Shown here: piece after piece, positions 18 through 42,118 of the stretch | Layout: each line of letters opens with the position of its first letter | Position numbering within the stretch: the stretch's first letter is position 1 | Virus record (IMG/VR): IMGVR_UViG_3300036770_004723 | Span: 186,001-250,000 of that record | Direction: 5' to 3' (one strand) | DNA length: 64,000 nt | The notes under the pieces: model-generated | The model's database searches: none | What the model was told of the DNA's origin: nothing | The model's input: the letters and a program-made list of their open reading frames with translations, nothing else | Made by a program: the position numbers and the translations under genes

Positions 18-500
18 TTGCTTTCAGACTTAAGACTGGCACGAAATGTCTTAGCTGTCGAAGGTGCTTTTAAAGATACTGTTGTGCAGGCGTGGATAAA
101 AAAATTTGAGATTGAGCCTCAACTAATAAATGTAACTCGTGTGGCAACAAAACAGAGTTTACTGCAAGCATCAAAAGAAAGAAATGTAAAAGCGAAAAAA
201 GCATTTAATGATTTGATGGATAAAGCAAAAGCAGTATCACAAGATCTAAAAAAGCAAAACTTAAAGAAGCTTAGTAAAGCAGTTATGACGTTCTCAGAAT
301 TGCTTGACTCTGAGCGTACATATTTGAGTAAGAGAGAGATTGAAAAATATGAAACACTAATAAAGTTGTTAAACATTGAAATCTCCTTAAACTCTGAAAA
401 CCTAGATGTTCAAGAGCGATCAGATTTACTCAAACAAAAGAGTTTAGTATTAGTGCGCTTTAGCAAACTTGACGGCATAAACCCATTTACTTTAATATAA
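18..500 (+). CDS. Hypothetical helical protein, probably 5'-truncated by the window edge
   Basis: Frame is open upstream to position 3; coiled-coil-like composition. Confidence 0.6.
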   Translation: MLSDLRLARNVLAVEGAFKDTVVQAWIKKFEIEPQLINVTRVATKQSLLQASKERNVKAKKAFNDLMDKAKAVSQDLKKQNLKKLSKAVMTFSELLDSERTYLSKREIEKYETLIKLLNIEISLNSENLDVQERSDLLKQKSLVLVRFSKLDGINPFTLI

Positions 501-503
501 GGC

Positions 504-893
504 ATGAAAATGAAAATTAAGGTTAGATTAATCTCTACTTCGGCATCTAATAGTAAAACTCCAGAAATTAAATCAAAAATATCTGAATTGGCTTCTTTGC
601 TTTTTGAGTCAAAAAATAAAATAATTAAAGAACTTAAAGTAACCAAGCCTTTAGTTAAATCTGTTGAATCACTAGGTTACGCTGTTCGATTGGCGCGTAA
701 GTCTCACGTAGCGCAGAATAAATTAGATGATCTTGCTTCTTTGCTTGGTGTTAATCCAGCACATTTAACATCTGCTGTAGATAAAACAGGTTATTGTCTT
801 CATTTCAGTTCAGGTGCTGCAACTAAAGCCATAGCTTCTTTAAAAAGAATGGCTAAGGCAGAATCTGTGGAGAGTTCTTCTAAAAAAGCCTAA
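504..893 (+). CDS. Basic putative internal head protein with SxS leader
   Basis: N-terminus MKMKIKVRLISTSAS; Lys-rich. Confidence 0.6.
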   Translation: MKMKIKVRLISTSASNSKTPEIKSKISELASLLFESKNKIIKELKVTKPLVKSVESLGYAVRLARKSHVAQNKLDDLASLLGVNPAHLTSAVDKTGYCLHFSSGAATKAIASLKRMAKAESVESSSKKA

Positions 894-1114
894 TAGAGAG
901 TAACCTAAGAAAAGAATAAGATCTTTTAGATAAAGGACTTGAAATTGCGGCCAAATGAATTTGCTTTTGCTGATCGGGTAGAAACTTGTTGTTAAAAATT
1001 CTAAAACTCACGATGTAAAAAGCTTTAATTACTCCGGCAAAAACTATTACATATAACATCACAGAATCTGCGACTGCTCTCCCATTTAAACGACGTTAGT
1101 ATTAAGGAAGCACA

Positions 1115-1669
1115 ATGAAAATTTTCGTATCGCAATCAGCTGAAGTTACACAGCAAACTTTAAAACGTAAGATGAAAATCGGCGCTAAAGTACAATTACT
1201 TATGGTCGCTTCTCCTTCAGAAATAGGAACTTTAGGTCGAGGCAAAGCATCTGTAACAATAGCACATAATTATGTTGTTACAGATATTCAAACAACTAAA
1301 TCAGGTGACATTAAAAACTGTACACTTACAGTAAAAGGACCTAAGCCTTCACCGACATTAGGTTTAAAATCTGTTGAAGTACTAACCGCAACTACATTGG
1401 CTAAGTTGATGTCAACTAAACTTAATAAAGATTCAAAAGTTGGAACTAAATCTTTAAAGTTTGTCACGGTAAAATCTAAAGACACTGCTATGGGTAACGC
1501 TAAAGATTCCAAGTTAGCTCAACTTAAAGATAAAGTTAAAGAACTTGAATCTGCATATAAAAAGGCGATATCAGATTACCATAAAGCAGAAACTGCTGTT
1601 GATAAGGCAGATAATGCACTTGATAAAGCGAAACGTGCTTTAGATCTTTATATGAGTAAAACGCTGTAG
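1115..1669 (+). CDS. Basic putative internal head protein (SxS leader), paralog of 2033..2866
   Basis: SD AAGGA; MKIFVSQSAE; C-terminal coiled coil. Confidence 0.65.
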   Translation: MKIFVSQSAEVTQQTLKRKMKIGAKVQLLMVASPSEIGTLGRGKASVTIAHNYVVTDIQTTKSGDIKNCTLTVKGPKPSPTLGLKSVEVLTATTLAKLMSTKLNKDSKVGTKSLKFVTVKSKDTAMGNAKDSKLAQLKDKVKELESAYKKAISDYHKAETAVDKADNALDKAKRALDLYMSKTL

Positions 1670-2032
1670 GTGGTTTACTTCCCACTAAAGTTAAATTAAC
1701 TGACTCTATAAAGATCTCTGATCTTGATAAGGAATTCGAGTTTGTTGAGTTTAAAGCTTAATTGAAAACATGTGATTGCTGCAATTTAGATTCAGCAATT
1801 TTCTACATGTGACCATTTTATTTAAAAGAATTATCCACAAGGTAGGAGGTGATCCATATCTCGTGGTAACTACGCCACGTAAAAGATTGTAGTAGAGCAA
1901 TGGCTCGACTGCATAGCGCAGACAACTTCTTTCTATTAGAGGATTTGCCGTGAAAAACAATGTCAGTGGCGATGTAAGTAATTAAACGAGTGTGTGCGGT
2001 GTAAAAGCCGCACCTTTATAAAAGGGAAAACC
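1670..2032 (+). ncRNA. Candidate structured non-coding RNA or leader
   Basis: About 360-nt gap with hairpins ATTGCTG/CAGCAAT, CGTGG/CCACG, GTGCGG/CCGCAC, and AGGAGGTGATCC at 1844-1855. Confidence 0.3.
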
Positions 2033-2866
2033 ATGAAAGTCTTTATATCACATTCGGCAGAATTTTCTACTGCTATTAAAAAGAAATTGGTTGTAGGTAA
2101 TACTTTTATTCTTAATACCTTAATCCTAGAAAAACCTGAACCTAAGCGACCTTCAGTTGGATTTATTACTTCTGAAATTCGTGCAGAGTACGCTAAGAAA
2201 CCTGCGGTTGTTAAAATTGAAAAAACTGAATATTTTATTGCTGAAGTTGAAGAAACTAGAACAGGCACACTCAAAAGTATTACCGCTAACAGAGTCAGAG
2301 GTACAAAATCTTTTACTTCAATGCGTTCAGGTTATAATCCGCCTGCTGTTTTAAAGTTAAGTGCTGCCAAATTGGTTAAACTTCTTGATACCAGAATCAC
2401 AAAAACTGATTCAAAAGGTACGCAAAGCATTACACTTAAATCAGTGACAGGATCGAAATCTGAAAAACTTGCACCTTCTTCGGTTGACTCTAAAATAGCA
2501 AAACTTCGATCTCAAATTCAAGATCTGACAAATCAATTAAATGCCCTTGATAAAATTAAGAGTGCTGAACGGGCTAAGATCGAAGCAGAATCTAATAAAC
2601 GTGCTTTAGATAAATTGAAGGCCGACGGTTACACTTACATTCAAGAAATTGCAGGTAAACGTGTTAAGAAACGTACTTTAGTGGAAGCAAGAAACGTTAA
2701 TCCAGGTATAGGTAAATCTGCGGCTATTTATGCAGTTAAAGACGGTAAAGAGCAAAAAATACTAGTGTGGTCAGCAAAAGATCCGATAACAAAACGTATC
2801 TTTAAGGGCTATATGTGGTGGTTTACCACTAACACTGCTGAGAAAAAATTTAGCGCTGCTGTATAA
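2033..2866 (+). CDS. Basic putative internal head protein (SxS leader), paralog of 1115..1669
   Basis: Start moved to ATG 2033 after AAGGG; MKVFISHSAE. Confidence 0.65.
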   Translation: MKVFISHSAEFSTAIKKKLVVGNTFILNTLILEKPEPKRPSVGFITSEIRAEYAKKPAVVKIEKTEYFIAEVEETRTGTLKSITANRVRGTKSFTSMRSGYNPPAVLKLSAAKLVKLLDTRITKTDSKGTQSITLKSVTGSKSEKLAPSSVDSKIAKLRSQIQDLTNQLNALDKIKSAERAKIEAESNKRALDKLKADGYTYIQEIAGKRVKKRTLVEARNVNPGIGKSAAIYAVKDGKEQKILVWSAKDPITKRIFKGYMWWFTTNTAEKKFSAAV

Positions 2867-2880
2867 TTAATTTCCAGATT

Positions 2881-2917
2881 TGGGTGCTGTATAAAAGCTG
2901 TACCCATTTATTTTCTT
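2881..2917 (+). terminator. Possible intrinsic terminator
   Basis: TGGGT...ACCCA imperfect stem followed by a T-rich tract. Confidence 0.35.
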
Positions 2918-2932
2918 TATATAAGGGCACTT

Positions 2933-3277
2933 ATGAAGAAGCTTACCATTACATTAGTTTCTACATCAAAATCCGTTAATAGTATCCAACGTAATGGTAA
3001 GCATATTGAATATAATGGATTATTGTTTCCTGATTTTGATAAGCCTATTGAAATAAATGACAAACGATACAAACGTGCAGTGCTTGCACGTAAAGGCAAT
3101 GAATTCAAATTAATTCGTTATGGCCATGTTGATTACGAAGATTTTACTACACATAAAGATCCTGAACGTAGAGATCGTTTCAGGAAGAGGTTCCGTGGTA
3201 TATTAAAATCAGACGGTAAGCCAGCATACAAAGATAAGTGGCAAGCTGCTTATTGGGCGTATAACGATCTTTGGTAA
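2933..3277 (+). CDS. Small basic viral protein (DUF5754-like) with SxS leader
   Basis: KLIRYGHVDYEDFTTHKDPERRDRFRKRF...AAYWAYNDLW pattern; leader MKKLTITLVSTS. Confidence 0.55.
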   Translation: MKKLTITLVSTSKSVNSIQRNGKHIEYNGLLFPDFDKPIEINDKRYKRAVLARKGNEFKLIRYGHVDYEDFTTHKDPERRDRFRKRFRGILKSDGKPAYKDKWQAAYWAYNDLW

Positions 3278-3294
3278 ATGTTTAAGGAAAATCT

Positions 3295-3915
3295 ATGAAA
3301 ATCACACTGGTCTCAACAAGCAAATCTAGTTTAGTAAGTGAATCAGCTAAAAAACCTAGTCTTACAAGTTGGTTTGATAAACTTTCAAAAGAAGCTCAAG
3401 AAGAATATTTGGAAGAGCATCCAAATAGTATTTATGCTAAGCATTCACTGCGTAAGGCAAATCACAAAGCGCGTAAATCCCGTACAGGATCTATGGCGGA
3501 AAATTTAGATCCAAGATTTGCAGAAGCCTCTAAGGGTTTAGATCCTAACTTGCTAAAAGAAGTTTCGAAATTAGATGAAGATCTACAACAAGCTTTCACA
3601 GAACATTTTTCTGGCTATATAGATGAACTTATGCTGGATTTTGATAGTGAACAGACTGATGACGCTTTAAAGGGACGTAAAGCTCGCGCTATAAAAGCTA
3701 AAAAAGAAGCAGACTCTAGCACAGATCCTAGATCTAAAAAGAAAGCTACGCAAGAGTTTAAGAGAGCCTTTGCTGATTATAAAGAATTAAAACTAGCACA
3801 ACAAAAAGCACAGGATATTATGAAAACTCCTGGTAAGCTTGAAAAATTTAAAAATGAATTAGGTAGAAAACTTTTAAGTAAAATGAGCAAAGTACAAGCG
3901 AATACTAGCGTGTAA
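3295..3915 (+). CDS. Putative internal head protein (double SxS leader, HPxSxYAK module)
   Basis: MKITLVSTSKSSLVSESA; WFDKLSKEAQEEYLEEHPNSIYAK. Confidence 0.6.
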   Translation: MKITLVSTSKSSLVSESAKKPSLTSWFDKLSKEAQEEYLEEHPNSIYAKHSLRKANHKARKSRTGSMAENLDPRFAEASKGLDPNLLKEVSKLDEDLQQAFTEHFSGYIDELMLDFDSEQTDDALKGRKARAIKAKKEADSSTDPRSKKKATQEFKRAFADYKELKLAQQKAQDIMKTPGKLEKFKNELGRKLLSKMSKVQANTSV

Positions 3916-3954: not shown

Positions 3955-5313
3955 ATGATTATTAGTATATCATCAAGAACTTCAGGTAAAGAAGTAAAAC
4001 CAGTTAAGATTCCAAAGAGTATTGCTTTCGCTGCTGAAAAAACAAAGTCTCGTATTGTTAAAGCAGTACCAGGCCGTTATATTCTTAAAAATCGCAAAGG
4101 TATGTTTGTTGTAGTAAGATTCAAAGACGAAACACGTTATACCGCAAGTGTTGGTACAAAACTTTTTTCTGCATCAAGCACTGAATCTGATGTAGAAGAT
4201 TATTTTGTTGTTGAATCTGAATCTAATCAGCCTGGTGCTCGTAATTCAGCGGCAGGAAATAAGTTGGGTAAGAAAAATCATGCTAAAGGCATGTTGGCAG
4301 CTGGTTGGTGGTTATTTGTAAAACGTGCAGATGGTAAAATGCAAAAGGCATATATAGGTGGTCGTATTAGTGGCCGTCGCCTATTAGGTTTATTAGATCC
4401 TTCAACAGTTAAAACTGAAGAACCGAAGAAACCTATCAAACCAAAAGCAAAAGCAGGTAAATTTAAAGTTGTTAAATTGAACGGTAGAAATTTATACGAC
4501 CTGAAGATAAAAGGTAAGAGTGCTGCTACTCTCAGTGCAACTCAAAAAGTTTCAAACATCAAATCTATGAAAAAATTAGGTCTTGATGATAAAGAGATTC
4601 AAGAAATTTTATCTCAACTTAAAACGGAACCACCTAAAACAGTGAAAGATTCATTAAAAGAACGTAAAGAAGAATCGAAGAGGAATGCAGACTCGCCACT
4701 GAAACAGAGAGTTAGACAACTTAATAAAGAACAGATGGCGCGTGACAAAGCTAATGAGAATTTCAGCAACAAAAAAGCACCAGAATTAAAGAACTACGGT
4801 ACGGATATGCGTACATTAGTAGATGCCATAGTAGTAGCAAGCGCTTCAAAAGATCCAAAAACACTCACTAAATATGTGAAAGAAATTGCTGCGAAAGCGC
4901 ATGAAGCTTGGGCTGCCCAATTTAGAAAAGATAATCCTGATCAAAAATCCCGCGTTAAAGCTACGAAAGATGCTGATTGGATTAAAGCAAATGGATCAGA
5001 TAAAGTTGACATTTTAAATACTAAATTTGATGACTTACCTTCTGACTGGCAAGCTGAAAATTTAAAAGGGGGTACAGCGTCACTTGCTGCTTTCATGAAA
5101 GCAGGTAAAGTGATCTCAAAAGATCCAAAAGCAGATATTTCAATACCTTTGGAAAAAGCTTCTGATGAAGTACATAAGAAGTGGCTGGAACGTAATGGAG
5201 CATGGGCGCAAGAAGATCAAAAAGTTTCATACGCTAAACTAAGTGAAACTGAGAAACAAAAAGATCGAGACTTCATTGCCAATACTATTAAAGTATTGTC
5301 GAAATACCGTTAA
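3955..5313 (+). CDS. Modular putative head protein with C-terminal tandem RyR-like domain
   Basis: N-terminal ~150 aa paralogous to 5820..7451; AHEAW...DDLPSDWQ and VHKKWLERNG..W..VSYAKLSETEKQKDR repeats. Confidence 0.6.
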   Translation: MIISISSRTSGKEVKPVKIPKSIAFAAEKTKSRIVKAVPGRYILKNRKGMFVVVRFKDETRYTASVGTKLFSASSTESDVEDYFVVESESNQPGARNSAAGNKLGKKNHAKGMLAAGWWLFVKRADGKMQKAYIGGRISGRRLLGLLDPSTVKTEEPKKPIKPKAKAGKFKVVKLNGRNLYDLKIKGKSAATLSATQKVSNIKSMKKLGLDDKEIQEILSQLKTEPPKTVKDSLKERKEESKRNADSPLKQRVRQLNKEQMARDKANENFSNKKAPELKNYGTDMRTLVDAIVVASASKDPKTLTKYVKEIAAKAHEAWAAQFRKDNPDQKSRVKATKDADWIKANGSDKVDILNTKFDDLPSDWQAENLKGGTASLAAFMKAGKVISKDPKADISIPLEKASDEVHKKWLERNGAWAQEDQKVSYAKLSETEKQKDRDFIANTIKVLSKYR

Positions 5314-5331
5314 ATTTTATAGGATACTTTC

Positions 5332-5715
5332 ATGAAAATCAAACTGTTCATAAGTGAATCTAATTGGTTTTCGGATCTAACTGAGAAAGCAAAAAAGCTT
5401 TATATAAAGGAACACCCTGAGAGTAAATATGCAAAACAATTAAGTGAACCTTCAGCTGCTAAACAAAGTGTACGTAAGATGGAAGTATACTTTATTAAAG
5501 ATGTAGACAGATTTGTTCAAATTGTGCGTATTGATCCTAAACTACTTTTTAAACACTTCTTTATGAAGCCATCGCCTCCTTATGATATGGAGTTGCATGA
5601 AGTAGTTAATGGTGTCACAAAAGGTAAAACTTTAGATCTTCCTAGATCCGCTTTAGATGCTGCACACAAAGAAAATTTAATAGGCACACGAGTTATGCTT
5701 GTTGAATTTAAATAA
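5332..5715 (+). CDS. Putative internal head protein (SxS leader, HPxSxYAK module)
   Basis: MKIKLFISESNWFSDLTEKAKKLYIKEHPESKYAK. Confidence 0.6.
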   Translation: MKIKLFISESNWFSDLTEKAKKLYIKEHPESKYAKQLSEPSAAKQSVRKMEVYFIKDVDRFVQIVRIDPKLLFKHFFMKPSPPYDMELHEVVNGVTKGKTLDLPRSALDAAHKENLIGTRVMLVEFK

Positions 5716-5717
5716 AG

Positions 5718-5743
5718 AAAAGCCGCTTAATTGCGGCTTTTTT
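5718..5743 (+). terminator. Intrinsic terminator
   Basis: AAAAGCCGC-TTAATT-GCGGCTTTTTT. Confidence 0.85.
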
Positions 5744-5819
5744 GCTATCTACATGCTGAAAAGTATAATTTAAGTATGTAAGTTTATCTTACTATTTAAG
5801 CGCTTAAAAGGAACCTGTC

Positions 5820-7451
5820 ATGACTAAACCTGCTAATTCTGTTAAGCCTGTACGTGAAGGGCAGAAACAGAAAGATAAGAAGCCTGTGGTCATTCCAAAA
5901 AGTATTAAGTTTGCAGCTGAAAAAACTAAGAGTCGCATTTCATTTGCGATTCCTGGTCGCTACATTCTTCAAAACCGTAAAGGAATGTTCGCAATTGTTC
6001 GAATCAGTGAAGACACTAAAATGTCTCCGTCAATCGTCACCAAAGTATTCAAAGCAACTGCCAGTGACATTGATCTGACTGAAGATCAGATCTTTGCACT
6101 TGAGCCTGTTGAGTTAGATTCCTTATCAGAATCTAATCAACCTGGACCTAAAAATTCAAGTGTTGGCAATAAACTAGGTAAGAAAACACGGGCACCTAAT
6201 GTACTAGCTAAAGGCTGGTGGATGTTCCGTAAAGGCAAAGATGGTAAAACAGCTAAAGCCTATATCGGTGGTCGTATTAGTGGTCGTCGTTTACTTGCTT
6301 TGTTAGATCCAGCTCAAGCACCAAAACCTAAAACAGAAGTTGTTGATCAAATTGGTAAGAAACCAGTTGTCGATACAAAAAAGATTGCTGAACTCACTAA
6401 AATCTACAAAAAACTTGGTGAGGGTATTAAACAAGCTAAAGAACGTTTAACTACTTTAAAGCGCGCTACTTCTAAAATCAGTTTAAAAGCAAAGATTAAA
6501 GAAGCGATGGAAAAACGTAAAGAAATCGCGGATCAAATCAAAGCATTAAAGTCTGGTGTTAAAGTAGAAGCGAAACCTGCGGAAACAAAACCTAAAGTTG
6601 ACGCAAAACCTAAGGCTACACAGGTTAAAACAAAAGCAGATATATCTGCACTGTCCCCTAGCCAACAAGTTTCATTTAAAAAGTTAAAAACACAAGGCAC
6701 AGAACTAGTTAAAAAGATTAAAGAATTTCAGACAAAGATGGAATCTCTTAAATCAAAACCAGCTAAAGCAAAAGTTCAATCAGCTATTGATGAATTGATG
6801 AAGTTAAAGAACGCTATTGCTAAAAAACTTCAAATGTATTTAAAGAAAGCACGAGATAAAAATACTGAACCTAAAGAAGCAGCCGTTGTTAAAAAGCCAG
6901 AGCCTGCTAAAGCTGAACCTAAAGCTGTTAAGGTTAAACCAAAGGCACCTGCAAAAAAACCTGAACCTATGAGTCAGGAAAAGAAAGAAGCCAAGGCCGA
7001 AGTAAAAGATCGAGAGAGCAAAATTGATGTTCTCGTTGAGAAACATGATAGTCTTAAAGAAAAAATCGAAAAGATTAAAGACCCAAGACAGAAGGCGAAA
7101 CTTCAATCTGCAATTGATGCCATCAACAAACGGATTGAAATCAACGCCGCTAAAAAGTCTGGAGCCAATAGTCGTTTAAAATCTACAAGTGCTGAAGATA
7201 TTTATTTCCAAACTTATAGTGGTGCCGTTCAACATGCTGTGGATACCGCTACAAAAAAGGGTTACGGCTACGATCAAGATGATTATGACCGTATCGTAGC
7301 CAACAATAGTAAAAAACCTTCAGCAGGTAAAACAACTAAATTTATATTGCCTTTAATAAAAGAAGGTAAAAGGTCAGGGCTAACAGTGGCAGTTTACTGC
7401 ACTGACGCAAATACCCCAAAACCTTATGAACTCACTTACTATATACATTAA
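5820..7451 (+). CDS. Lys-rich modular putative head protein
   Basis: Shares N-terminal domains with 3955..5313; coiled-coil and K/P/A-rich linker; separate C-terminal domain ending YELTYYIH. Confidence 0.65.
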   Translation: MTKPANSVKPVREGQKQKDKKPVVIPKSIKFAAEKTKSRISFAIPGRYILQNRKGMFAIVRISEDTKMSPSIVTKVFKATASDIDLTEDQIFALEPVELDSLSESNQPGPKNSSVGNKLGKKTRAPNVLAKGWWMFRKGKDGKTAKAYIGGRISGRRLLALLDPAQAPKPKTEVVDQIGKKPVVDTKKIAELTKIYKKLGEGIKQAKERLTTLKRATSKISLKAKIKEAMEKRKEIADQIKALKSGVKVEAKPAETKPKVDAKPKATQVKTKADISALSPSQQVSFKKLKTQGTELVKKIKEFQTKMESLKSKPAKAKVQSAIDELMKLKNAIAKKLQMYLKKARDKNTEPKEAAVVKKPEPAKAEPKAVKVKPKAPAKKPEPMSQEKKEAKAEVKDRESKIDVLVEKHDSLKEKIEKIKDPRQKAKLQSAIDAINKRIEINAAKKSGANSRLKSTSAEDIYFQTYSGAVQHAVDTATKKGYGYDQDDYDRIVANNSKKPSAGKTTKFILPLIKEGKRSGLTVAVYCTDANTPKPYELTYYIH

Positions 7452-7554
7452 ATATTTGGTGAATTTATACTTTATTTAGTTGTATACCTTAATTTAATAA
7501 TATACGGATAATCGGTCTGTATAACATTAACCCTTAGTTCAGGAGTGTTCAAAG

Positions 7555-9843
7555 ATGACCATTAAAAAACGAGGCAAAAAACTGCCAATCGTTGTATATG
7601 GCAAGTCTGAGTCAGATGCTACTGGGTTGTACTCTGCTGTCGCTTCAGGCGATGGCGTCGTTTCACTTAGTAATGGTGTTCAATCAATTTTAACCCATGA
7701 AAGTTTAAGCGAAGCATTGTACAATCCTATGACAGGTCAAATCGATCTGGAAGAAGATGTAGAAATGACTGCAATGGCAAGCACAGCGCAACCATTAACA
7801 GGTACTGTTAGTATTTTCAGTGCAGAATGTTCTGATGGGTGCGGTAATCATATTATCAGCGACATCAATTTATCTTTCTGTCCTTCATGTTCCGCAGACC
7901 TTCCTGAAGATGAAGAAGAATCTGAAGTTGATTTAGTTGACGAAGAAGATTCAGATCTTGACGAAGAAGATTCAGACATCGACGACGATTCAGACATCGA
8001 CGACGATTCAGACATCGACGAAGATTTAGACATCGACGAAGATTTAGAATCTGAATCTAATGAAAGTATGATTGTTGTTGCAGCGGATTCATTGGCTGAA
8101 GCGGTAGCTCAGTTTCGCCAAGTAGCCAGCCAACAAGATCGTAAAATTTTTGCATCTGAGTCTGGTTCATTTGTTTCGCATTCAAATTCTGAAGTGAATT
8201 ACGATCCAATCACCAGCGATTTTGCGGAAGAAGTTGAAGGCGATGTTACTATTGTCAGCGAATCTTCTACATCCGATGAAATCGAAGCAGATCATTTAGT
8301 TTGTTCTGGTTGTAACGCACACCACATCAGTACAAGTTCTGCAATTGTAAATTGTATTCGTTGTGGTGAAGGCTTAATCGAATCCGAAAGTGCTGATCTT
8401 GATGAAGATGACTCCGAATCTGAATTGGCTTCTTTAGCTTCTGAAATTGAAGAATTAGAAGCTGAATTAGACCTCGATGAAGATGAAGATTTTGATCTGG
8501 ATGACGACGATCTAGAATCAGAATCTAGTGATGAAGACGATCTTGATATTGATTCTTTGCTATCTGAAGCTAGCGATCTTCTTGAAGAGTTTGAGGACAT
8601 CGAATTTAATTCTGAATCCTCAGATGATCTGGATGAAGATTTAAGCGATTATGATATGGATCAAGAAGAAGACCTTGATGCAGATGATTTGCTTGAATCC
8701 GAATCTTTTGCTGAAGGTAACGAATTTGGATCTTGTTCATCAGATGACGAAGATATTGATTTAGATATTCTAGATGAAGAAATTTCAGCTTTGGATTCTG
8801 ACGACTTGGAATCTGAAAGTGCCGATTTTGAACTGGATGAAGATTTAATTGATCTGCTTTCTGAGTCAAGTGACGACGAAGACGAAGACGAAGACGAAGA
8901 AGATTTTAGCCTCGAAGATTTAGATACAGATATGCCGGAAGACGAAGACGAAGACGAAGACGATTCTGACATTGAAGGCTTCGACATTGAAGATAGCTTA
9001 GATGAAAAAGAAATGGCGTCTGAATCTATGTCTTTCGATGTAGATCTACTGAAAGCATTATCTGCTACTGAAGATCTGGATGTTAAAAAATTCCATGTTG
9101 CTCACTGTGGTAGTATTGAAGGCCAGTCCACTTGGACAGCATTCTACGGTAAATTCCCAGTAGCCATGTGTTCAGAATCTAACGTCAACGAAAACACGGC
9201 ACTGAAAAATATTTTCGAAAGCGCTAAATTCGGTGAAGCGGTTAAGGCACATGCTAATGCTTCAGGTATTGACGATGCACTTACACAATTCAAGTTTGAA
9301 AGAATTAATCCTGAACTTGAAGTCGATGCAATTGTATCACAAGAACTGGTTTCACAATGTGAAGCTCGTGTGAATGAAGCAAATGAAGCATTGAATGCTG
9401 CGTTGGCCGGTGTAGATGCTGCTAAAGATCAGGAAGTTGAACAACAACTTGATCGTGTTATGGAAGCACTGTCTGCAAGTTCATTAGGTATCAACCGTGG
9501 CGTATTTGTAGGATCTTCAAATCCAATTGCAATGCGTCTAATTTCGGCATTAAGTGCTGCTGGTATTAATCCAGACAACGCAGCTGATTTAGTAAATGAT
9601 GCTTTCACTCAAGCTGGTGATACTTATGCAGAACAACTGTTAAGTCATGCACGTAGCTTGTTGGAAAAACCTGAAGATGTTGCTCAAGCAGTAATCGAAC
9701 AAATTGTTGCTACCGCTAATAATCGCATTGTTATTCCAAAAACACATGTTGAAGTAAGTGACAAGAAAACTCAGCCGATGCAATCTGAATCTTCTTCAAA
9801 AGCTTCAGCTTCTAATCACTTCCTTGCTATCCTTGAAAATTAA
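7555..9843 (+). CDS. Acidic prohead scaffold/core protein with two Zn-ribbon-like units
   Basis: Two genes upstream of the MCP; extreme D/E content; 14 SES motifs; two four-Cys clusters. Confidence 0.65.
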   Translation: MTIKKRGKKLPIVVYGKSESDATGLYSAVASGDGVVSLSNGVQSILTHESLSEALYNPMTGQIDLEEDVEMTAMASTAQPLTGTVSIFSAECSDGCGNHIISDINLSFCPSCSADLPEDEEESEVDLVDEEDSDLDEEDSDIDDDSDIDDDSDIDEDLDIDEDLESESNESMIVVAADSLAEAVAQFRQVASQQDRKIFASESGSFVSHSNSEVNYDPITSDFAEEVEGDVTIVSESSTSDEIEADHLVCSGCNAHHISTSSAIVNCIRCGEGLIESESADLDEDDSESELASLASEIEELEAELDLDEDEDFDLDDDDLESESSDEDDLDIDSLLSEASDLLEEFEDIEFNSESSDDLDEDLSDYDMDQEEDLDADDLLESESFAEGNEFGSCSSDDEDIDLDILDEEISALDSDDLESESADFELDEDLIDLLSESSDDEDEDEDEEDFSLEDLDTDMPEDEDEDEDDSDIEGFDIEDSLDEKEMASESMSFDVDLLKALSATEDLDVKKFHVAHCGSIEGQSTWTAFYGKFPVAMCSESNVNENTALKNIFESAKFGEAVKAHANASGIDDALTQFKFERINPELEVDAIVSQELVSQCEARVNEANEALNAALAGVDAAKDQEVEQQLDRVMEALSASSLGINRGVFVGSSNPIAMRLISALSAAGINPDNAADLVNDAFTQAGDTYAEQLLSHARSLLEKPEDVAQAVIEQIVATANNRIVIPKTHVEVSDKKTQPMQSESSSKASASNHFLAILEN
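7939..8052 (+). repeat. In-frame 18/21-bp tandem repeats encoding DDDSDI/DEDLDI units
   Basis: GACGACGATTCAGACATC-like units repeated within the scaffold CDS. Confidence 0.85.
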
Positions 9844-10595: not shown

Positions 10596-11684
10596 ATGAG
10601 TAATTTAGTCAAAGGTAAAACTTTCAGTCTGCGTAACGGCGCACCGGTGACAGATCTGAAATTCAAAGGCAGCAACATGACTGCTCTTTCAAGTAACGGT
10701 GAAGTGAACGCAAATGACAATCGCGATCTGATGCACAAAATCGGCCAGCTGTTACAGTCTGTATCATCTGGTGAAATTGTTCAACAAAATGTAGGTGCAT
10801 TTGCTTCTTTATCAAATTCAGATAAAGTAAATTTGATCGCTGTTGCAAATTCTGATAAAGATAAATGGGCTGCTTTAGGTGCATCTATCGCACAAGAAGT
10901 ACGTGAACAGCAAACTCGTCAAGGTTTTTTACGCAGCATGACTGTTGTTGAAAACATGAAACAAGGCGAAGTAATGCGAGTTCCTATGCCTAAGCATGGC
11001 GGACGCGCTATTGTTGCAACTGGCCCAACTGCATTGCAGTATCAGTTAATTAATGATCGTTACTTTACACCTAGCCCGTTTGAATTAAAAGCTTCGGTAC
11101 GTGTAAGTAAGTTAGAAATGGTGCAGGCAACGCACGATTTATTAGACCATGCTTACAATGAAGCTGTTGAAGGTATGGTAACTGCCGGTGATCGTATTTG
11201 GAAAAGCGCTGCTGATCGTACTGTTGGTAAATCAAACAATTTGGTTGGTTTTAGCGGTGCTTTAACTCCGGCAGTTATTTCTCGTGCTGCTTCACGAATT
11301 CGTGAATGGAATCTTCCTGTATCTCGTGCAGTTATTGCTGCAAGTTTTTGGGAAGATATCCAATCTGAAAGTTCATGGGCAACTGCACTGACTCCAGTGT
11401 CACAGTACGAATTACTGTTAACTGGTAAGATTGCAACTATCTTCGGTCTGGATCTGATGACTGATGGTTTCCGTCCTGAAAACCAACGTGTGTTGACACG
11501 TAACGATGCTTATATTGTTGCTGATTCTGAATATCACGCTACTATGGGTTCGTTTGGTGGTATTGAAAGTACTCCAACTGATGGCTCCAACAACGGTGAA
11601 ACTACCAAAGGTTGGTTACTGTCTGAAGTAATGTCTTTCGTTATTCCTAACACACGTTCAGTTATCAAACTGCAACGTATCTAA
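10596..11684 (+). CDS. Major capsid protein
   Basis: 362 aa; position after scaffold and decoration genes; HK97-like features (GKIATIFGLDLMTD, GWLLSE near C-terminus); SD GGAG; followed by a terminator. Confidence 0.8.
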   Translation: MSNLVKGKTFSLRNGAPVTDLKFKGSNMTALSSNGEVNANDNRDLMHKIGQLLQSVSSGEIVQQNVGAFASLSNSDKVNLIAVANSDKDKWAALGASIAQEVREQQTRQGFLRSMTVVENMKQGEVMRVPMPKHGGRAIVATGPTALQYQLINDRYFTPSPFELKASVRVSKLEMVQATHDLLDHAYNEAVEGMVTAGDRIWKSAADRTVGKSNNLVGFSGALTPAVISRAASRIREWNLPVSRAVIAASFWEDIQSESSWATALTPVSQYELLLTGKIATIFGLDLMTDGFRPENQRVLTRNDAYIVADSEYHATMGSFGGIESTPTDGSNNGETTKGWLLSEVMSFVIPNTRSVIKLQRI

Positions 11685-11797
11685 TGATTAAAATGTCGGC
11701 TTAAATTAAAAATCCTTATTACTCTCCCTTAATATCGCCGACTAAGTACTGAGCTAGAAAAACTCTCACTTTCTAATTAAACTCGGTAAATTAATCA
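11685..11797 (+). ncRNA. Structured 3'-UTR element (three-way junction with twin C-rich loops)
   Basis: TGATTAA/TTAATCA closing stem; GTCGGC/GCCGAC and TACTGAG/CTCGGTA arms; loops ACTCTCCCTT and ACTCTCACTT. Confidence 0.45.
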
Positions 11798-11798
11798 C

Positions 11799-11842
11799 AA
11801 GAACCCGTATCGAGATATTCTTGGTACGGGTTTTCTTGTTTA
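11799..11842 (+). terminator. Intrinsic terminator after the MCP
   Basis: AAGAACCCGTA...TACGGGTTTTCTTGTTT. Confidence 0.8.
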
Positions 11843-11853
11843 AGGATCTTATA

Positions 11854-12534
11854 ATGGAAATTCAAAACTATATACTTGCGGATGATGCAGACTACGATCA
11901 ATTTTCAGGTACTTTAGTAGGTATATCTGTAATAACTGCTAAATTAAAGCAGTTGTTTAAATTTAAACATATTCCATTAGTATTAAATGATAACTGGCAA
12001 GGTGCATTAACGAAAGCTTATGGTATTGCAGATAATATTGAAAAAAAATTGCCGGATCCTTATTGCTATCTAAAAGTAAGTTCTTTTGGTGTTCGTGACG
12101 ACGCACATAACTTAAACCAGTCTATGCGGAATGGTACTGGATTTAATACACGAGGATCTGATACTGGTGATTTAAGTAATGCCTTACTTGATATGCAGTA
12201 TTTTGCTTGGGCCAAAGTTAACATAGAGCTTTGTGTTGGTTTCAGAAATCCAATTGCTTTTTTTGCTTTCTGCGAAAAATTGAGTATTGCTATACGCGCA
12301 CGTAGATTAAGTGCGTCCGCAAATTTTGATGGAAACGTTTTTGATGTATATGCAGATCCACAGCAAAGCGAAATATCTCCAACTATGATGACAACCGATG
12401 ATGCAACTACTGCTGGTTGGTTAACGTTAAATCATGCCCTTACCGTACACACCCAATTCGGTACATCTATCGCAGTCGCTAAACTTAATAATGAAGGAAT
12501 TATAACTAACAATGTAGAGGTGATCCGTGAATAA
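11854..12534 (+). CDS. Putative neck/tail-completion protein
   Basis: Between MCP and sheath; start moved to ATG 11854 after AAGGA. Confidence 0.45.
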   Translation: MEIQNYILADDADYDQFSGTLVGISVITAKLKQLFKFKHIPLVLNDNWQGALTKAYGIADNIEKKLPDPYCYLKVSSFGVRDDAHNLNQSMRNGTGFNTRGSDTGDLSNALLDMQYFAWAKVNIELCVGFRNPIAFFAFCEKLSIAIRARRLSASANFDGNVFDVYADPQQSEISPTMMTTDDATTAGWLTLNHALTVHTQFGTSIAVAKLNNEGIITNNVEVIRE

Positions 12535-12919
12535 AAATTCAAGAATATCTCAATTGAGACAAACAGGAAGAACCTTAACCACGTCCTTTGCTGTTGTATC
12601 TACAACTATAAACACAAAAGATACTAAAATTCGAGGGGACGACAGTGTTAGAATAACCGTAAGCGATAGACTAGTAGAGCAAGAAATTGCCTTATCTGTT
12701 TCAACTGAATTTGAGTTACCTATAAATTGCGTTAGTAAAATACTGGCTATAACTTCTGCACATAAATTTAAAATATTTTACAGAGCTGTTGAAACACAAG
12801 ACTATATATTTTTTGCGGTCTGCGATAAACAGTTTTTATTTAATGGTGCCTTACTCGGTCAATTTAAGATTGTAGGTGAGTACGATATTGAAACCTTAAT
12901 CAAAATTATTTACGCTTAG
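12527..12919 (+). CDS. Hypothetical structural-region protein
   Basis: ORF with GAGG SD, overlapping the previous stop. Confidence 0.55.
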   Translation: MNKNSRISQLRQTGRTLTTSFAVVSTTINTKDTKIRGDDSVRITVSDRLVEQEIALSVSTEFELPINCVSKILAITSAHKFKIFYRAVETQDYIFFAVCDKQFLFNGALLGQFKIVGEYDIETLIKIIYA

Positions 12920-12977
12920 TAAGAATGTCTCTAATTTATACTAGAGACTGAAAAAACGCTTTTTAGGAGCAAAACAC

Positions 12978-14597
12978 ATGATAGCGCCCAACAATCCAAG
13001 CGCTGGTGTCTATACATCTGAAATAGTTATTCCTGAACGTAGTACATCAACTTCTGTATCAACAGGTGTTATTGTAACTGCTGCTACACGCGGCAGAGTT
13101 ATGGAAAGAACGTTTTTAGGTGATAAAGGCGATCTGCGTAATAAATTCGGACCTAAAGTACCAAAACTTACTAAAGCACTTAATTGTGCTGAGCATTTTT
13201 TGAAAGAAAGTAATTCTCTTTATTTGACTCGTGTGGCAAGAAATGCCTTATATGCAGGACTGCTTGTTCGCACGTCTTCGAATTTTGCTACAACAGTTAA
13301 AATAAGTTCAGGTGTAGTTGATCCTAATGTAGTAGGCATGACTGAAGCAGATATCATGTTTATATACGCGGATAACCAAGGTAAATGGGGCAACGATGTT
13401 TATGTTGTACTTTATCCTGACACCACAGATGTAGATGGACATCAATTTATTTTAGAGGTATATGAAGGAATTTCTACAGTGCCTGTAGAAAGATACTCAT
13501 GTACTTCCTTCTATAAAAAAAGTGATAATGGTTCGCAGCTTTTTGTGGATGATGTTGTCAATTCTAAATCAACACGTATCAAAGTAAGATCAAACCAAAA
13601 TCATTTTGCTTTCGGTAGTAATTCTACTCCATTATTGATCAATGCTATTATAGGTGGTCCTTATGATAGAACAACTGGAAAATACAACGGCCAGTTATTT
13701 GGCGGTACTGATGGAGACCCTATTACAGTAGGCGATTTGATTCGTGGTTGGGATTTATATGCTGACTATGAAAAAGTTGATATTGATATTTTAATGTCAG
13801 CTGGCTATACCGATTTAGCTATAATGCACAAAATGAATGACATCGCTGCACAGCGTTTAGATTGTATTGCTGTATTTGATGCACCTGAAAGTTTAACAGG
13901 TGCAAGTGAGTTAGTAAATTTCAGACGTAATATCTTGAACATGAATAGTAGTAGTTCTGCTATTTATACACCACACGTTAAAGCTTTTGATAGTGATAAT
14001 AGCTTAAGTTACTTCGTACCTCCGTCTGGTATGGTTGGTGGTGTTTTTGCAAAAACTACAGAAATCGCAAGATCTTGGTTTGCACCTGCTGGCTTAAATC
14101 GAGCTATTTTAACAGATGTTCAAGAGTTAGCTGCTTATTATGATCAAGGTGATCGTAATATGCTTACACAAAATCAGATAAACTTCATCATTGAAAAGTC
14201 TGGCCAAGGTAATGTGATTTGGTTAGCAGATACTTTGTACGGTGGAGGCGGCGCAATGCAAGATATCGGTGTACGTCGATTACTTGCAATATTGCACCGT
14301 ATTGTACGTAGAGCGCAGTTAAGATCGATTTTTCAACCTAACGACGACTTTTTACGTAGACAGATCAGAGATGAAATGGTTGCCTTATTAGATCCTATAC
14401 AACGTGATCGTGGCCTAGATTGGTACGATGTTGTATGCTCTAAACAAAATAATTCAAATGACGGAATTGCGAACGGAGATTTAGTTTGCGATGTTTATCT
14501 TGATCCTACACGTTATACAAAACGTATTCACTTAAATGCTATCATTCCTAAGAAAGGTCAGATTTCATTTGCTGAAACTATAGGAGATAGACCTTAA
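12978..14597 (+). CDS. Contractile tail sheath protein
   Basis: AGVYTSE N-terminus; PPSG..GVFA; WFAPAGLNRA; VRRLL; FQPND; gp18-like motifs. Confidence 0.93.
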   Translation: MIAPNNPSAGVYTSEIVIPERSTSTSVSTGVIVTAATRGRVMERTFLGDKGDLRNKFGPKVPKLTKALNCAEHFLKESNSLYLTRVARNALYAGLLVRTSSNFATTVKISSGVVDPNVVGMTEADIMFIYADNQGKWGNDVYVVLYPDTTDVDGHQFILEVYEGISTVPVERYSCTSFYKKSDNGSQLFVDDVVNSKSTRIKVRSNQNHFAFGSNSTPLLINAIIGGPYDRTTGKYNGQLFGGTDGDPITVGDLIRGWDLYADYEKVDIDILMSAGYTDLAIMHKMNDIAAQRLDCIAVFDAPESLTGASELVNFRRNILNMNSSSSAIYTPHVKAFDSDNSLSYFVPPSGMVGGVFAKTTEIARSWFAPAGLNRAILTDVQELAAYYDQGDRNMLTQNQINFIIEKSGQGNVIWLADTLYGGGGAMQDIGVRRLLAILHRIVRRAQLRSIFQPNDDFLRRQIRDEMVALLDPIQRDRGLDWYDVVCSKQNNSNDGIANGDLVCDVYLDPTRYTKRIHLNAIIPKKGQISFAETIGDRP

Positions 14598-15864: not shown

Positions 15865-16512
15865 ATGCTGATTTCTATAAGCGTTACACCTAGTTATGCT
15901 TGGTATAGCTATGTGTTAAAACGCAAATTAAGCTACGGTAATGCACACAAAGAATATGTTCTGGAGTTAAATGAAGGTGATATATTCGGTGTCCGTAAGG
16001 CAGGACGTGTCTTTTATTTAATTGTTAAAGACTATACTGACATAGTTTTTAAGCTGACTACAGAAGAAGCAGAAGACCTTATAAAAAAATGTAAAGGTTG
16101 GTCAGGAAAGATTGATAAAAAAATAGTTTCAGCTGGAATTGGAGGCAAAGATTTAAGAGTAAGGCCGTCTGTAGCAGAAACTAAAATCAAAGCCCCTAGA
16201 ACATCAGGAAATAGTGGTGAAAATAAAGAGTTGACTGCTACTCTAAAGAAACTGCGTATTAAAGGTATAGCAGACATAAAATTCTTACATAAAGAATCTT
16301 TTTTACCTAATGAAATAACTTATTACTACGATATAACATCTTTATACAACGCTTACGCTATATCAAAGCGTTTTGACTCTAAGCCTAAAACTTGGGGAGA
16401 TGCTATAGAGGAAATGATTGAAAAATTAATTTCTAACCTTGATGTGGAGTGTGGTACTGTAAATTACTTAGGTAAGCCTACTAAATTAATGTCGGTATTA
16501 GTGTTGGAGTAA
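15865..16512 (+). CDS. Putative head protein (SxS leader) sharing a domain with 31621..34428
   Basis: MLISISV; YAWYSY..HKEY..GDIFGVR..FYL domain. Confidence 0.6.
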   Translation: MLISISVTPSYAWYSYVLKRKLSYGNAHKEYVLELNEGDIFGVRKAGRVFYLIVKDYTDIVFKLTTEEAEDLIKKCKGWSGKIDKKIVSAGIGGKDLRVRPSVAETKIKAPRTSGNSGENKELTATLKKLRIKGIADIKFLHKESFLPNEITYYYDITSLYNAYAISKRFDSKPKTWGDAIEEMIEKLISNLDVECGTVNYLGKPTKLMSVLVLE

Positions 16513-31062: not shown

Positions 31063-31611
31063 ATGAAAATCTTAATTAGCCTATCAAACGAAAAAATAAA
31101 TAAGAGTAGCGCAACGTTCGGTCCACTTACTGTAGTAGCGAATTTTGCTAACAAAAATATGTACAGTTGTACATGGGCAAATAAGATGAAAAATTCATCT
31201 ACTATATTGACCAAACTTGGATTTAAAAGCTATAGTGTCGTAGTAACTGGTCCAAATTTGCCTGAAAGTTCTCAAGCTTTTAAAGATTTAACTTCAGCTG
31301 CTTTAGGTTTCTTTAGTAATTGCAGTACAGTGCGTTTAGAAGACCTTAATATTGTTAATGGCAGGAAATGGGCAGCGGATTGGATCAAAAACGTAGAAAA
31401 TGTTTCTACGTTAAATGTACGTCTTGACATTAGAAGTAGAGAGCGCGACAATCTTCATATTCCTGTAACTGTAGGAACTGATGTTAAACGGCGCGGTGTA
31501 TTACTGTCTATTACTGAAATGAGTGCTAAATGCCGTGTAATGTTATTAAATGCGGATGGCAGCAATGGTAATGTTCTTGAATTGCCAAAAGATCAAATTT
31601 GGATTGAATAA
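31063..31611 (+). CDS. Putative head protein with SxS leader
   Basis: MKILISLSNE. Confidence 0.6.
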   Translation: MKILISLSNEKINKSSATFGPLTVVANFANKNMYSCTWANKMKNSSTILTKLGFKSYSVVVTGPNLPESSQAFKDLTSAALGFFSNCSTVRLEDLNIVNGRKWAADWIKNVENVSTLNVRLDIRSRERDNLHIPVTVGTDVKRRGVLLSITEMSAKCRVMLLNADGSNGNVLELPKDQIWIE

Positions 31612-41487: not shown

Positions 41488-41534
41488 CTATTATACAACT
41501 GAGTAAACTATACTGTAACTTCTTTTAATGAACC

Positions 41535-41870: not shown

Positions 41871-42118
41871 TTTCTATCCTTCCATTTTGCGAAGTCGTCA
41901 ATTTGTTTGAATATTTGGTCAGCACTAAAGTCAAATTCTTTGGAAGGTATTATGATAGTTCCCATTGATGTAGCTAAAGGATCTGCTTCATAGAAAGGTA
42001 TGAAAAGTCGTGCCTCTTTCTCATACATAACTATCATAAAAACATTAGAACTTAATCTACCTTTAAACCTGCTTTCTATCAGGCTTTTAAGTTTGTTTAA
42101 CTCTAATAATATACTCAT
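41867..42118 (-). CDS. Hypothetical protein
   Basis: ATGA-coupled ORF. Confidence 0.55.
   Translation of the reverse strand: MSILLELNKLKSLIESRFKGRLSSNVFMIVMYEKEARLFIPFYEADPLATSMGTIIIPSKEFDFSADQIFKQIDDFAKWKDRK

What the first reader, a model, noticed from the sequence alone, without database searches (positions are those of the whole stretch)
3955..7451. Two modular 'polyproteins' whose domains are delimited by S-x-S sites
Both share domain A (IPKSI.FAAEKTKSRI...PGRYIL.NRKGMF), then SESNQPG, then domain B (GNKLGKK..GWW.F...DGK..KAYIGGRISGRRLL.LLDP), and then diverge. Each unique C-terminal domain is again preceded by a motif copy: VVASAS before the RyR-like unit and LKSTSA before the YFQTYSGAV...YELTYYIH domain. 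Inference: a conserved carrier plus swappable payload released by the head protease, like a polymorphic effector.
Basis: partly seen in the sequence, partly recalled or inferred. Interest (0 to 1): 0.65.

Follow-up and report, generated by a model that had tools for sequence, protein, structure and literature searches.

The report
Jumbo-phage head proteins with S-x-S sites
Two neighbouring genes of an uncultivated 287-kb phage encode basic, modular proteins that are most likely loaded into the phage head and trimmed at serine-x-serine sites by the head protease, a familiar strategy (as in phage T4) that here seems to use an unfamiliar cutting motif.

Summary
ORFs 3955-5313 (452 aa) and 5820-7451 (543 aa) share an N-terminal ~150-aa module (46% identity, E 2e-55) and then diverge. 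They lie in the head module of a 286.6-kb jumbo phage related to NCTB and Lu11, between a T4 gp21-like prohead protease and an acidic scaffold and the major capsid protein.

S-x-S is a credible protease motif:
- A leader M-K-I-x-Φ-Φ-S-x-S opens 18 of 367 ORFs (2.8 expected), eight of them consecutive after the protease gene.
- The scaffold holds 14 SES (1.9 expected).
- The protease N-terminus carries a conserved S-x-S.
- The motif recurs in relatives, with A replacing S in Lu11.

Within the two proteins:
- The A/B junction site and the LKSTSA site are conserved and fall in predicted disordered linkers.
- VVASAS is not conserved and sits on a helix.
- The S-x-S count alone is not above chance.
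- A and B always co-occur, so they behave as one module.

Across 32 family members the C-terminal regions fall into at least 10 unrelated classes. No payload looks enzymatic.

Best reading: these are T4-IP-like internal head proteins with a new predicted protease specificity. Cleavage and packaging are inferred, not shown.

The parts
3955..5313 (+). Paralog 1 (452 aa, P0001), pI 9.95. Order: leader, module A-B, small alpha/beta domain, tandem RyR-like helical region.
3955..3972 (+). Leader MIISIS (S-I-S at residues 4-6). Orthologs read MIISLS, MILSLS and MLIKLISAS.
3994..4173 (+). Domain A of paralog 1 (about residues 14-73; helix plus three strands plus helix; pLDDT about 80).
4216..4224 (+). 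S-E-S (residues 88-90) in the disordered A/B loop (residues 74-109, pLDDT about 30). It is conserved family-wide as [S/A]-x-[S/A] before (A/N)(A/Q)PG.
4282..4410 (+). Domain B of paralog 1 (about residues 110-152; GWW hairpin plus helix). The 91-152 segment has pI 11.5.
4456..4629 (+). Third small alpha/beta domain (residues 168-225). P0003 and P0016 share it, but their C-terminal ends differ.
4840..4848 (+). S-A-S of VVASAS (residues 296-298). It is not conserved in orthologs, lies at the end of predicted helix 285-297, and is probably not a site.
4849..5310 (+). RyR-like region, apparently two repeats (AHEAW...DLPSDWQAEN and HKKW...LSETEKQKDRD). It scores below the Pfam threshold.
5332..5715 (+). 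Intervening 127-aa basic ORF with leader MKIKLFISES. It is a paralog of ORF 3295-3915.
5820..7451 (+). Paralog 2 (543 aa, P0009), pI 10.0, net charge +61. It has no leader. Order: module A-B, three helical hairpins separated by K/A/P-rich disordered stretches, compact C-terminal domain.
6120..6134 (+). S-L-S-E-S (residues 101-105) in the disordered A/B loop (residues 91-128).
7182..7190 (+). S-T-S (residues 455-457) inside disordered linker 448-458. All 9 orthologs read S-(T/N/K/V)-S here.
7197..7448 (+). C-terminal alpha/beta domain (residues 460-543, pLDDT about 85). It is a phage-only fold that also occurs as stand-alone 95-110-aa proteins. A 462-aa protein of phage Melnitz contains a homolog at 37.5% identity.
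504..3915 (+). Upstream array of five small basic ORFs (504, 1115, 2033, 2933, 3295), each starting MK..(L/F)(I/V)S-x-S.
7555..9843 (+). Acidic scaffold-like protein (762 aa, net charge -186). It has 14 SES and 27 S-x-S, against 1.9 and 13.3 in shuffles.
10596..11684 (+). Major capsid protein (phrog_2522, E 2e-75).

Best explanation
The two genes are paralogous internal head (ejection-type) proteins of a jumbo myophage. They belong to an array of basic proteins encoded between the prohead protease gene and the scaffold and capsid genes.

Proposed mechanism:
1. The genes are expressed late together with the head genes (inferred from position and orientation).
2. The strongly basic proteins enter the prohead core together with the extremely acidic scaffold. 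The short leader M-K-I-x-Φ-Φ-S-x-S and/or the conserved A-B module does the targeting (inferred from charge complementarity and by analogy with the T4 capsid-targeting sequence).
3. The gp21-family protease cuts at small-x-small sites, which read S-x-S in this phage. This removes the leader, opens or removes the A/B loop region, detaches the C-terminal domain of the 543-aa protein at S-T-S, and shreds the scaffold at its many E-S-E-S sites (inferred from motif statistics, conservation and predicted disorder).
4. The basic mature fragments stay with the packaged DNA and are probably ejected with it (inferred).

Over evolutionary time the constant N-terminal module has been joined to many unrelated C-terminal regions. 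This last point is shown.
For: Context:
- The window is part of a 286,584-bp virus record.
- The protease gene matches phrog_18299 at E 1e-90 and lies about 1.1 kb upstream of the window start.
- The order protease, variable array, module proteins, scaffold, 230-aa virion protein, MCP, sheath is kept in NCTB, L008 and L010.

Leader:
- [LIVFM][LIVFMT]S.S occurs in the first 14 residues of 18 of 367 ORFs, against 2.8 +/- 1.7 (maximum 9) in 500 shuffles. Eight of these ORFs are consecutive.
- 35 leaders from four lineages give a variable P2 around the two Ser on which they were aligned, L/F at P5, I/V/L at P4 and A at P1'.
- The two Ser are encoded by both TCN and AGY codons, so selection acts on the protein.

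Scaffold:
- 14 SES against 1.9 +/- 1.3 expected.
- Homologs in L008, JA11, NCTB and L010 also carry E-S-x-S repeats, and Lu11 has A-S-A at an aligned place.

Protease N-terminus:
- It reads S-S-S|FD, S-E-A|FD, S-K-S|FD, S-R-S|FA and A-L-G|FT in seven phages.

Sites in the two proteins:
- The junction is [S/A]-x-[S/A] in 31 of 31 members.
- S-T-S is conserved in all 9 orthologs.
- Both lie in segments with pLDDT below 50.

Charge:
- All array proteins have pI 9.5-10.1, and the scaffold has pI 4.05.

Modularity:
- A profile search of 1.84 billion representative proteins finds 21 clusters, with the module in the N-terminal part of every one.
- The C-terminal regions fall into at least 10 BLAST-unrelated classes with mosaic sharing.

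Precedent:
- T4 has a 10-residue capsid-targeting sequence removed by gp21, and variable IP genes among T4 relatives (PMC9026906).
- SPN3US ejection-protein paralogs have propeptides of 111-254 residues that are cut several times (PMC10052503).
Against: - There is no proteomic or biochemical evidence for packaging or cleavage. Among phage records the module occurs only in NCTB, itself from surface water, so no cultured phage carries it.
- The S-x-S count in the two proteins is not above chance.
- The 543-aa paralog lacks the leader.
- Every characterised gp21-family protease cuts after Glu, so cutting at Ser would be unprecedented in this family.
- Small-x-small is a low-information motif, and the sequences compared are homologous, so conservation could be structural.
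- The complex prediction of module against scaffold C-terminal domain gave no answer.
Confidence: 0.55

Rival explanations
1. The protease is Glu-specific like its characterised relatives. The true motif would be x-S-E|S or Φ-E|S, and S-x-S is a by-product of Ser at P2 and P1'.
For: - T4, phiKZ, 201phi2-1 and SPN3US proteases all cut after Glu, and SPN3US prefers Ser at P1'.
- 14 of the 27 scaffold S-x-S are S-E-S, and P4 is often Glu.
- Several leaders of this phage have a Glu within 10-20 residues.
Against: - Many leaders have S-x-S and no Glu nearby, for example NCTB MKIISISARSKAPIPRAIQATIDKSKPK, MKINLISVSATKRAAKAK and MKILLSVSALNKQAVKRK.
- Junctions read S-L-S, S-V-S, S-Q-S and A-L-S.
- P2 in the 35 leaders is T, E, L, I, D or Q.
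Confidence: 0.15
2. The proteins are packaged or act in head assembly, but are not cut at the internal sites. Only the leader (if anything) is removed, and the internal S-x-S motifs are chance or structural features of linkers.
For: - The S-x-S count is at chance level.
- VVASAS is clearly non-conserved.
- A and B always co-occur, and VIA aligned them as one unit spanning 20..150.
- 42 SPN3US head proteins are uncut.
Against: - The junction keeps [S/A]-x-[S/A] with a variable middle residue in 31 of 31 members. This holds even where a 150-aa insertion separates A from B, as in P0028.
- The junction pentamer (Φ-E-S-E/D-S) is the same as the scaffold repeat and as some leaders (VESDS in P0025 and P0026).
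- Both sites lie in disordered segments.
Confidence: 0.2
3. They are not virion proteins at all. They would be late-expressed, histone-like DNA-binding or condensing proteins, or assembly chaperones, that merely sit in the head gene cluster.
For: - Very basic composition with K/A/P-rich, H1-like stretches.
- No homology to any known structural protein.
- The relative L010 carries apparently non-structural genes (PAS-GGDEF-EAL) in the same array.
Against: - The position between protease and scaffold is conserved in four lineages.
- They share the leader with neighbouring genes, one of which matches a 'minor head protein and DNA pilot' family.
- The leader's enrichment points to a shared processing or targeting signal.
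Confidence: 0.1

Closest known systems
Phage T4 internal proteins IPI, IPII, IPIII and Alt, with the 10-residue capsid-targeting sequence removed by prohead protease gp21
   Same: - Short N-terminal leader ending in the protease motif.
- Basic proteins encoded with the head genes.
- Homologous (gp21-family) protease.
- Cargo set varies among related phages.
- Acidic scaffold core degraded to peptides (PMC9026906).
   Different: - The motif here is S-x-S (small-x-small), not L/I-x-Glu.
- The two proteins carry an extra conserved 150-aa A-B module and internal candidate sites.
- One paralog has no leader.
- There is no sequence similarity to the T4 IPs.
Inner-body and ejection protein paralog families of phiKZ, 201phi2-1 and SPN3US, cut by gp175 or gp245
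   Same: - Jumbo phages.
- Paralogous head proteins with long N-terminal propeptides that hold several protease sites.
- Propeptides are removed and the C-terminal parts kept (PMC10052503).
   Different: - Those proteases cut after S/A/G-x-Glu or A-x-Glu.
- No PHROG or sequence match to those families.
- This phage belongs to the Lu11/NCTB/PaBG/Dickeya-Erwinia lineage, not to the phiKZ-like phages.
Polyvalent proteins, MuF-fused effectors and polymorphic toxins (Iyer et al. 2017, PMC5512222)
   Same: A constant part joined to variable C-terminal modules, a predicted head-packaged and injected role, and mosaic domain shuffling.
   Different: - Polyvalent proteins combine recognisable enzymatic effector domains and often their own peptidase.
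- Here the proteins are small (about 190-590 aa for complete members) and no enzymatic or toxin domain is detectable.
- The only structural hint is a weak BFVD row to a 'large polyvalent protein associated domain' protein at E 0.012.
Herpesvirus assemblin (cuts Ala|Ser) and signal peptidase I (Ala-x-Ala rule). Both are cited from general knowledge.
   Same: Small residues at P3 and P1, a variable P2 and a small P1'. Assemblin shares its fold with phage prohead proteases.
   Different: The resemblance is in the motif only. No homology test was done, and the scissile bond here is not known.
RyR domain (Pfam PF02026)
   Same: Both signature stretches align to bacterial and human RyR repeats. All four orthologs give RyR as the best Pfam hit. 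The top Foldseek rows are RyR repeats.
   Different: The score is below Pfam's cut-off (21.4 against 27.4 bits), and Foldseek gives E about 0.4 with TM 0.2-0.4.

Membership tests
T4-type capsid-targeted internal protein system | A gp21-family (S77-like) prohead protease encoded with the head genes | tested here: met
   phrog_18299 'head maturation protease' at E 1e-90 for L003:16059-16850. tblastn hits to annotated prohead core proteases at 45-50% identity.
T4-type capsid-targeted internal protein system | A short N-terminal leader ending in the protease recognition motif | tested here: inconclusive
   Present on the 452-aa paralog and on 7 other ORFs of the array after the protease gene, and enriched 18 against 2.8. 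Absent from the 543-aa paralog.
T4-type capsid-targeted internal protein system | Cleavage C-terminal to Glu in an L/I-x-Glu motif | tested here: not met
   The conserved element is S-x-S (or A-x-A), and many leaders have no Glu. The cleavage itself was not observed.
T4-type capsid-targeted internal protein system | The protein is present in virions in processed form and is ejected | not testable with these tools
   Needs virion proteomics. The module is absent from cultured phages.
RyR domain (PF02026) | Score at or above Pfam's gathering threshold | tested here: not met
   21.4 bits against 27.4; 18 bits for the whole protein.
RyR domain (PF02026) | Fold similarity to solved RyR repeats | tested here: inconclusive
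   The top Foldseek rows are 6uhi, 8x48 and 6uhs, but with E 0.4-0.7 and TM 0.2-0.4. The profile against PDB gives E 1.6e-4 to the RyR chimera.
Polyvalent proteins / polymorphic effectors | Two or more recognisable effector (enzymatic or anti-defence) domains in one polypeptide | tested here: not met
   No Pfam or PHROG family above threshold in either protein or in the separated domains.
Polyvalent proteins / polymorphic effectors | A constant delivery part with hypervariable C-terminal modules | tested here: met
   At least 10 unrelated C-terminal classes sit on one N-terminal module, with mosaic sharing among P0001/P0003/P0016, P0028/P0029/P0032 and P0025/P0026.
phiKZ-like inner-body / ejection protein paralogs | Sequence homology to those families | tested here: not met
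   No PHROG match. tblastn against 50,697 phage records finds only NCTB.

The most novel reading that the evidence does not exclude
In the NCTB / Dickeya-Erwinia branch of jumbo phages, the gp21-family prohead protease has changed its P1 specificity from Glu to small residues (Ser or Ala). That would resemble herpesvirus assemblin or signal peptidase. An 8-10-residue tag, M-K-I-x-Φ-Φ-S-x-S, would then be a portable 'load into the capsid, then cut off' signal. It would let these phages package a fast-evolving set of basic cargo proteins built on a new A-B carrier module.
Probability: 0.4. Interest if true: 0.7.

Novelty: new variant of a known kind. Interest (0 to 1): 0.5.

Why it matters
If the S-x-S rule holds, it would be the first gp21-family prohead protease not tied to glutamate. 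It would also give a simple sequence rule for predicting head-packaged, injected proteins in a large clade of mostly uncultivated jumbo phages, and in cultivable Dickeya, Erwinia and Yersinia phages whose scaffolds and proteases show the same motif. The short leader could serve as a capsid-loading tag, as the T4 CTS does. The A-B module is a rare family (21 clusters among 1.84 billion representatives) with no known fold match. It offers a clean example of how phages diversify cargo on a constant carrier.

Tried and rejected
- DNA search (blastn) of the locus against 50,697 phage records found no match.
- Pfam and PHROGs scans of both proteins and of the separated domains gave nothing above threshold.
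- Foldseek against the PDB gave no match at E <= 0.001 for either model.
- VIA-align wide search on the 452-aa model gave best Z 6.4, within noise. The list was dominated by one helix pair.
- BFVD returned only the two NCTB orthologs plus weak rows.
- Complex prediction of the A-B module against scaffold residues 500-762 returned 'no answer' (score 0.00). It counts neither for nor against binding.
- Literature searches found no described cleavage motif for the Lu11/PaBG/Dickeya lineage. The phage G paper held in the library does not give the MCP cleavage site.
- I tried to fix the MCP maturation site by alignment. Candidates exist (A-F-A|S in this phage, A-T-A|S in Lu11, S-E-S|H in JA11), but NCTB has no clean small-x-small there, so I left it open.
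- I rejected a nucleotide-level explanation of the leader (recombination box or translation signal), because the Ser codons come from both codon families.
- The read-mapping tools were not used.
Full report
**What the sequence is.** The window is bases 186,001-250,000 of a 286,584-bp virus record, with about 35% G+C.

The finding lies in a head morphogenesis module. A 264-aa T4 gp21-like head maturation protease (phrog_18299, E 1e-90) is encoded about 1.1 kb upstream of the window start. A run of small basic ORFs follows, then the two ORFs of the finding. After them come:
- a 762-aa very acidic scaffold-like protein (phrog_20988);
- a 230-aa virion protein (phrog_16710);
- the major capsid protein (phrog_2522, E 2e-75);
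- a tail sheath.

The MCP and protease place the phage with Phage NCTB (49% and 48% identity), Pseudomonas phages Lu11 and PaBG, and the Dickeya, Erwinia and Yersinia jumbo phages. It is not phiKZ-like.

**Checking the observation.** ORF 3955-5313 (452 aa, P0001) and ORF 5820-7451 (543 aa, P0009) share an N-terminal region at 46% identity (E 2e-55) and nothing significant beyond it. A third gene, 5332-5715, lies between them.

The raw number of S-x-S in the two proteins is not above chance: 4 against 2.85, and 5 against 2.3 in shuffles. The motif copies therefore have to be judged one by one, by conservation and structural setting.

**Anatomy of the two proteins.** AlphaFold2 on the ortholog alignments gives the following for P0001:
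- domain A at residues 14-73 (pLDDT about 80);
- a disordered loop at 74-109 that holds S-E-S 88-90;
- domain B at 110-152;
- a small alpha/beta domain at 168-225;
- a disordered stretch, then a helical region to the end.

VVASAS (293-298) sits at the end of helix 285-297.

For P0009 the order is:
- domain A, then a disordered loop at 91-128 holding S-L-S-E-S 101-105, then domain B at 132-162;
- three helical hairpins separated by K/A/P-rich disordered stretches;
- a disordered linker at 448-458 that contains LKSTSA;
- a compact alpha/beta domain at 460-543 (pLDDT about 85).

So the A/B junction site and LKSTSA lie in linkers, and VVASAS does not.

The helical end of P0001 is RyR-like but below threshold. 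Pfam gives 21.4 against 27.4 bits in all four orthologs. The profile against the PDB gives E 1.6e-4 to a RyR chimera, with both signature stretches aligned. Foldseek's top rows are RyR repeats at E about 0.4.

The C-terminal domain of P0009 has no PDB match. In the ESM Atlas it resembles phage-only clusters at TM 0.68-0.72. These include stand-alone 95-110-aa proteins and large proteins with DUF6321 or dockerin. It also has a 37.5%-identical copy inside a 462-aa protein of the T4-like Methylophilales phage Melnitz.

**The family.**
- The word search found 15 relatives.
- A profile of the A-B module, run against 1.84 billion representative proteins, found only 21 clusters of 103-591 aa. The module lies in the N-terminal part of each.
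- Among phage records only NCTB carries it, in two adjacent copies as here.
- After the module, the sequences fall into at least 10 classes unrelated by BLAST, with mosaic sharing. P0001, P0003 and P0016 share the 168-225 domain but have different ends. P0028, P0029 and P0032, and P0025 and P0026, share other pieces.
- A and B are never separated except in truncated entries. In some members 60-150 residues are inserted in the loop between them.

The view of A and B as two separate polyprotein products is not.

**Is S-x-S a protease motif?** Five independent lines point the same way.
1. *Leaders.* [LIVFM][LIVFMT]S.S occurs within the first 14 residues of 18 of 367 ORFs, against 2.8 +/- 1.7 (maximum 9) in 500 shuffles and about 0.7% in control windows. 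Eight of the 18 are consecutive genes following the protease gene.
   - The same leaders head the arrays of L008, L010 and NCTB.
   - 35 aligned leaders show a variable P2 around the two Ser on which they were aligned, L/F at P5, I/V/L at P4 and Ala at P1'.
   - The Ser codons come from both codon families.
2. *Scaffold.* It carries 14 SES against 1.9 +/- 1.3 expected, and 27 S-x-S against 13.3. The sites are mostly Φ-E-S-E-S between acidic runs. Homologs in L008, JA11, NCTB and L010 show the same pattern with E, D, Q, N or V in the middle.
3. *Protease N-terminus.* It keeps S-S-S|FD, S-E-A|FD, S-K-S|FD and S-R-S|FA in six phages. This recalls the candidate N-terminal autocleavage site of T4 gp21.
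4. *Lu11.* It replaces Ser by Ala or Gly in all three contexts: leader MKVYLAIAAS, scaffold A-S-A, protease A-L-G|F.
5. *The two proteins.* The junction is [S/A]-x-[S/A] followed by (A/N)(A/Q)PG in 31 of 31 members, with E, D, L, V or Q in the middle. The pre-domain site of P0009 is S-T-S, S-N-S, S-K-S or S-V-S in all nine orthologs. VVASAS is AKHT, ARHT or AQTD in the orthologs.

**Mechanism proposed.**
- All array proteins are basic (pI 9.5-10.1). P0009 has net charge +61 and the scaffold -186.
- I propose that the basic proteins enter the prohead core with the acidic scaffold, guided by the leader and/or the A-B module.
- The protease then removes leaders, cuts the A/B loop and the S-T-S linker, and reduces the scaffold to short acidic peptides that leave.
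- The basic fragments stay with the DNA and are probably ejected with it.

This is the T4 scheme: a 10-residue capsid-targeting sequence, gp21, IP proteins, and variable IP sets among relatives (PMC9026906). It is also the scheme of the SPN3US and phiKZ ejection-protein paralogs, which have long, multiply cut propeptides (PMC10052503).

What is shown: context, leader enrichment, motif conservation, disorder, charge and modularity. What is inferred: packaging, the scissile bond, cleavage itself and ejection.

**Rivals.**
- *A Glu-specific protease (S-E|S).* This fits all characterised relatives. It is contradicted by leaders and junctions that have no Glu.
- *No internal cleavage.* This fits the chance-level counts and the constant co-occurrence of A and B. 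It does not explain why the junction pentamer equals the scaffold repeat.
- *A non-virion, histone-like role.* This fits the composition, but not the conserved position or the shared leader.

**Open points.**
- P0009 and its close orthologs have lost the leader, whereas the distant ortholog P0017 starts MTISTSAK.
- The fold of the A-B module has no match (Z at most 6.4).
- The complex prediction of module against scaffold gave no answer.

**Novelty.** The kind of system is known: head-packaged proteins processed by the prohead protease. What is new is the predicted specificity (small-x-small instead of x-x-Glu), the leader consensus, and the A-B carrier family. I therefore rate it a new variant of a known kind, of moderate interest. 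No step needed referral.

Noticed in passing
window 15865-16512, 31063-31611, 35258-36928, 38425-38772, 40942-41457; genome 11604-12095(-), 12387-12893(-), 175810-177486: More ORFs with the MK..S-x-S leader lie outside the head array, several of them among tail and baseplate genes. They may be further capsid-loaded proteins, or the protease may also process other virion parts. PHROGs gives only 'unknown function' families.
   Followed up: partly
window 3295-3915 and 5332-5715; L008:5101-5703; L010:1441-2922: Directly after the leader these proteins share the motif W-F-x-x-L-x-x-x-A/Q-x-x-Y-(I/L)-x-E-H-P-x-S-x-Y-A-K. The two window ORFs are paralogs (E 7e-6). The motif's function is unknown.
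   Followed up: partly
window 1115-1669 and 1994/2033-2866: These two are a second paralog pair in the array (30% identity, E 4e-10). The 290-aa GTG-start ORF listed at 1994 more likely starts at ATG 2033, which gives the leader MKVFISHSAE.
   Followed up: partly
window 7555-9843: The scaffold-like protein has two CxxC...CxxC pairs that look like zinc ribbons, 28.6% Asp+Glu and net charge -186. The PHROG label 'ATPase' for its family (phrog_20988) looks like a misnomer.
   Followed up: partly
window 2933-3277: This 114-aa leader-bearing protein matches DUF5754 (E 1e-8) and a segment of phrog_220 'minor head protein and DNA pilot' (E 2e-14). This supports a virion-internal role for the array.
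   Followed up: no
L010:4903-5412, 6112-7806, 11779-13938: A related 278-kb metagenomic phage carries Peptidase_C92 (weak), Topoisom_I and PAS-GGDEF-EAL genes between its protease and scaffold genes. These are possible enzymatic cargo or morons in the same variable array.
   Followed up: no
window 10596-11684 (MCP residues 60-75): The 280-aa chain deposited for phage G's MCP (6wkk_A; probably the mature form) aligns from residue 70 of this MCP, directly after A-F-A|S. This is a candidate maturation site that fits the small-x-small rule. It is not consistently conserved in NCTB.
   Followed up: partly
L012:4023-5411 (Methylophilales phage Melnitz): The C-terminal domain of the 543-aa protein recurs (37.5% identity over 87 residues) inside a 462-aa K/E-rich hypothetical protein of a T4-like marine phage. 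The domain therefore travels between unrelated phage lineages.
   Followed up: partly
window about 41500-42100: GC skew and coding strand both flip here. Genes run on the + strand up to about 41.5 kb and on the - strand afterwards. This marks the end of the structural module.
   Followed up: no
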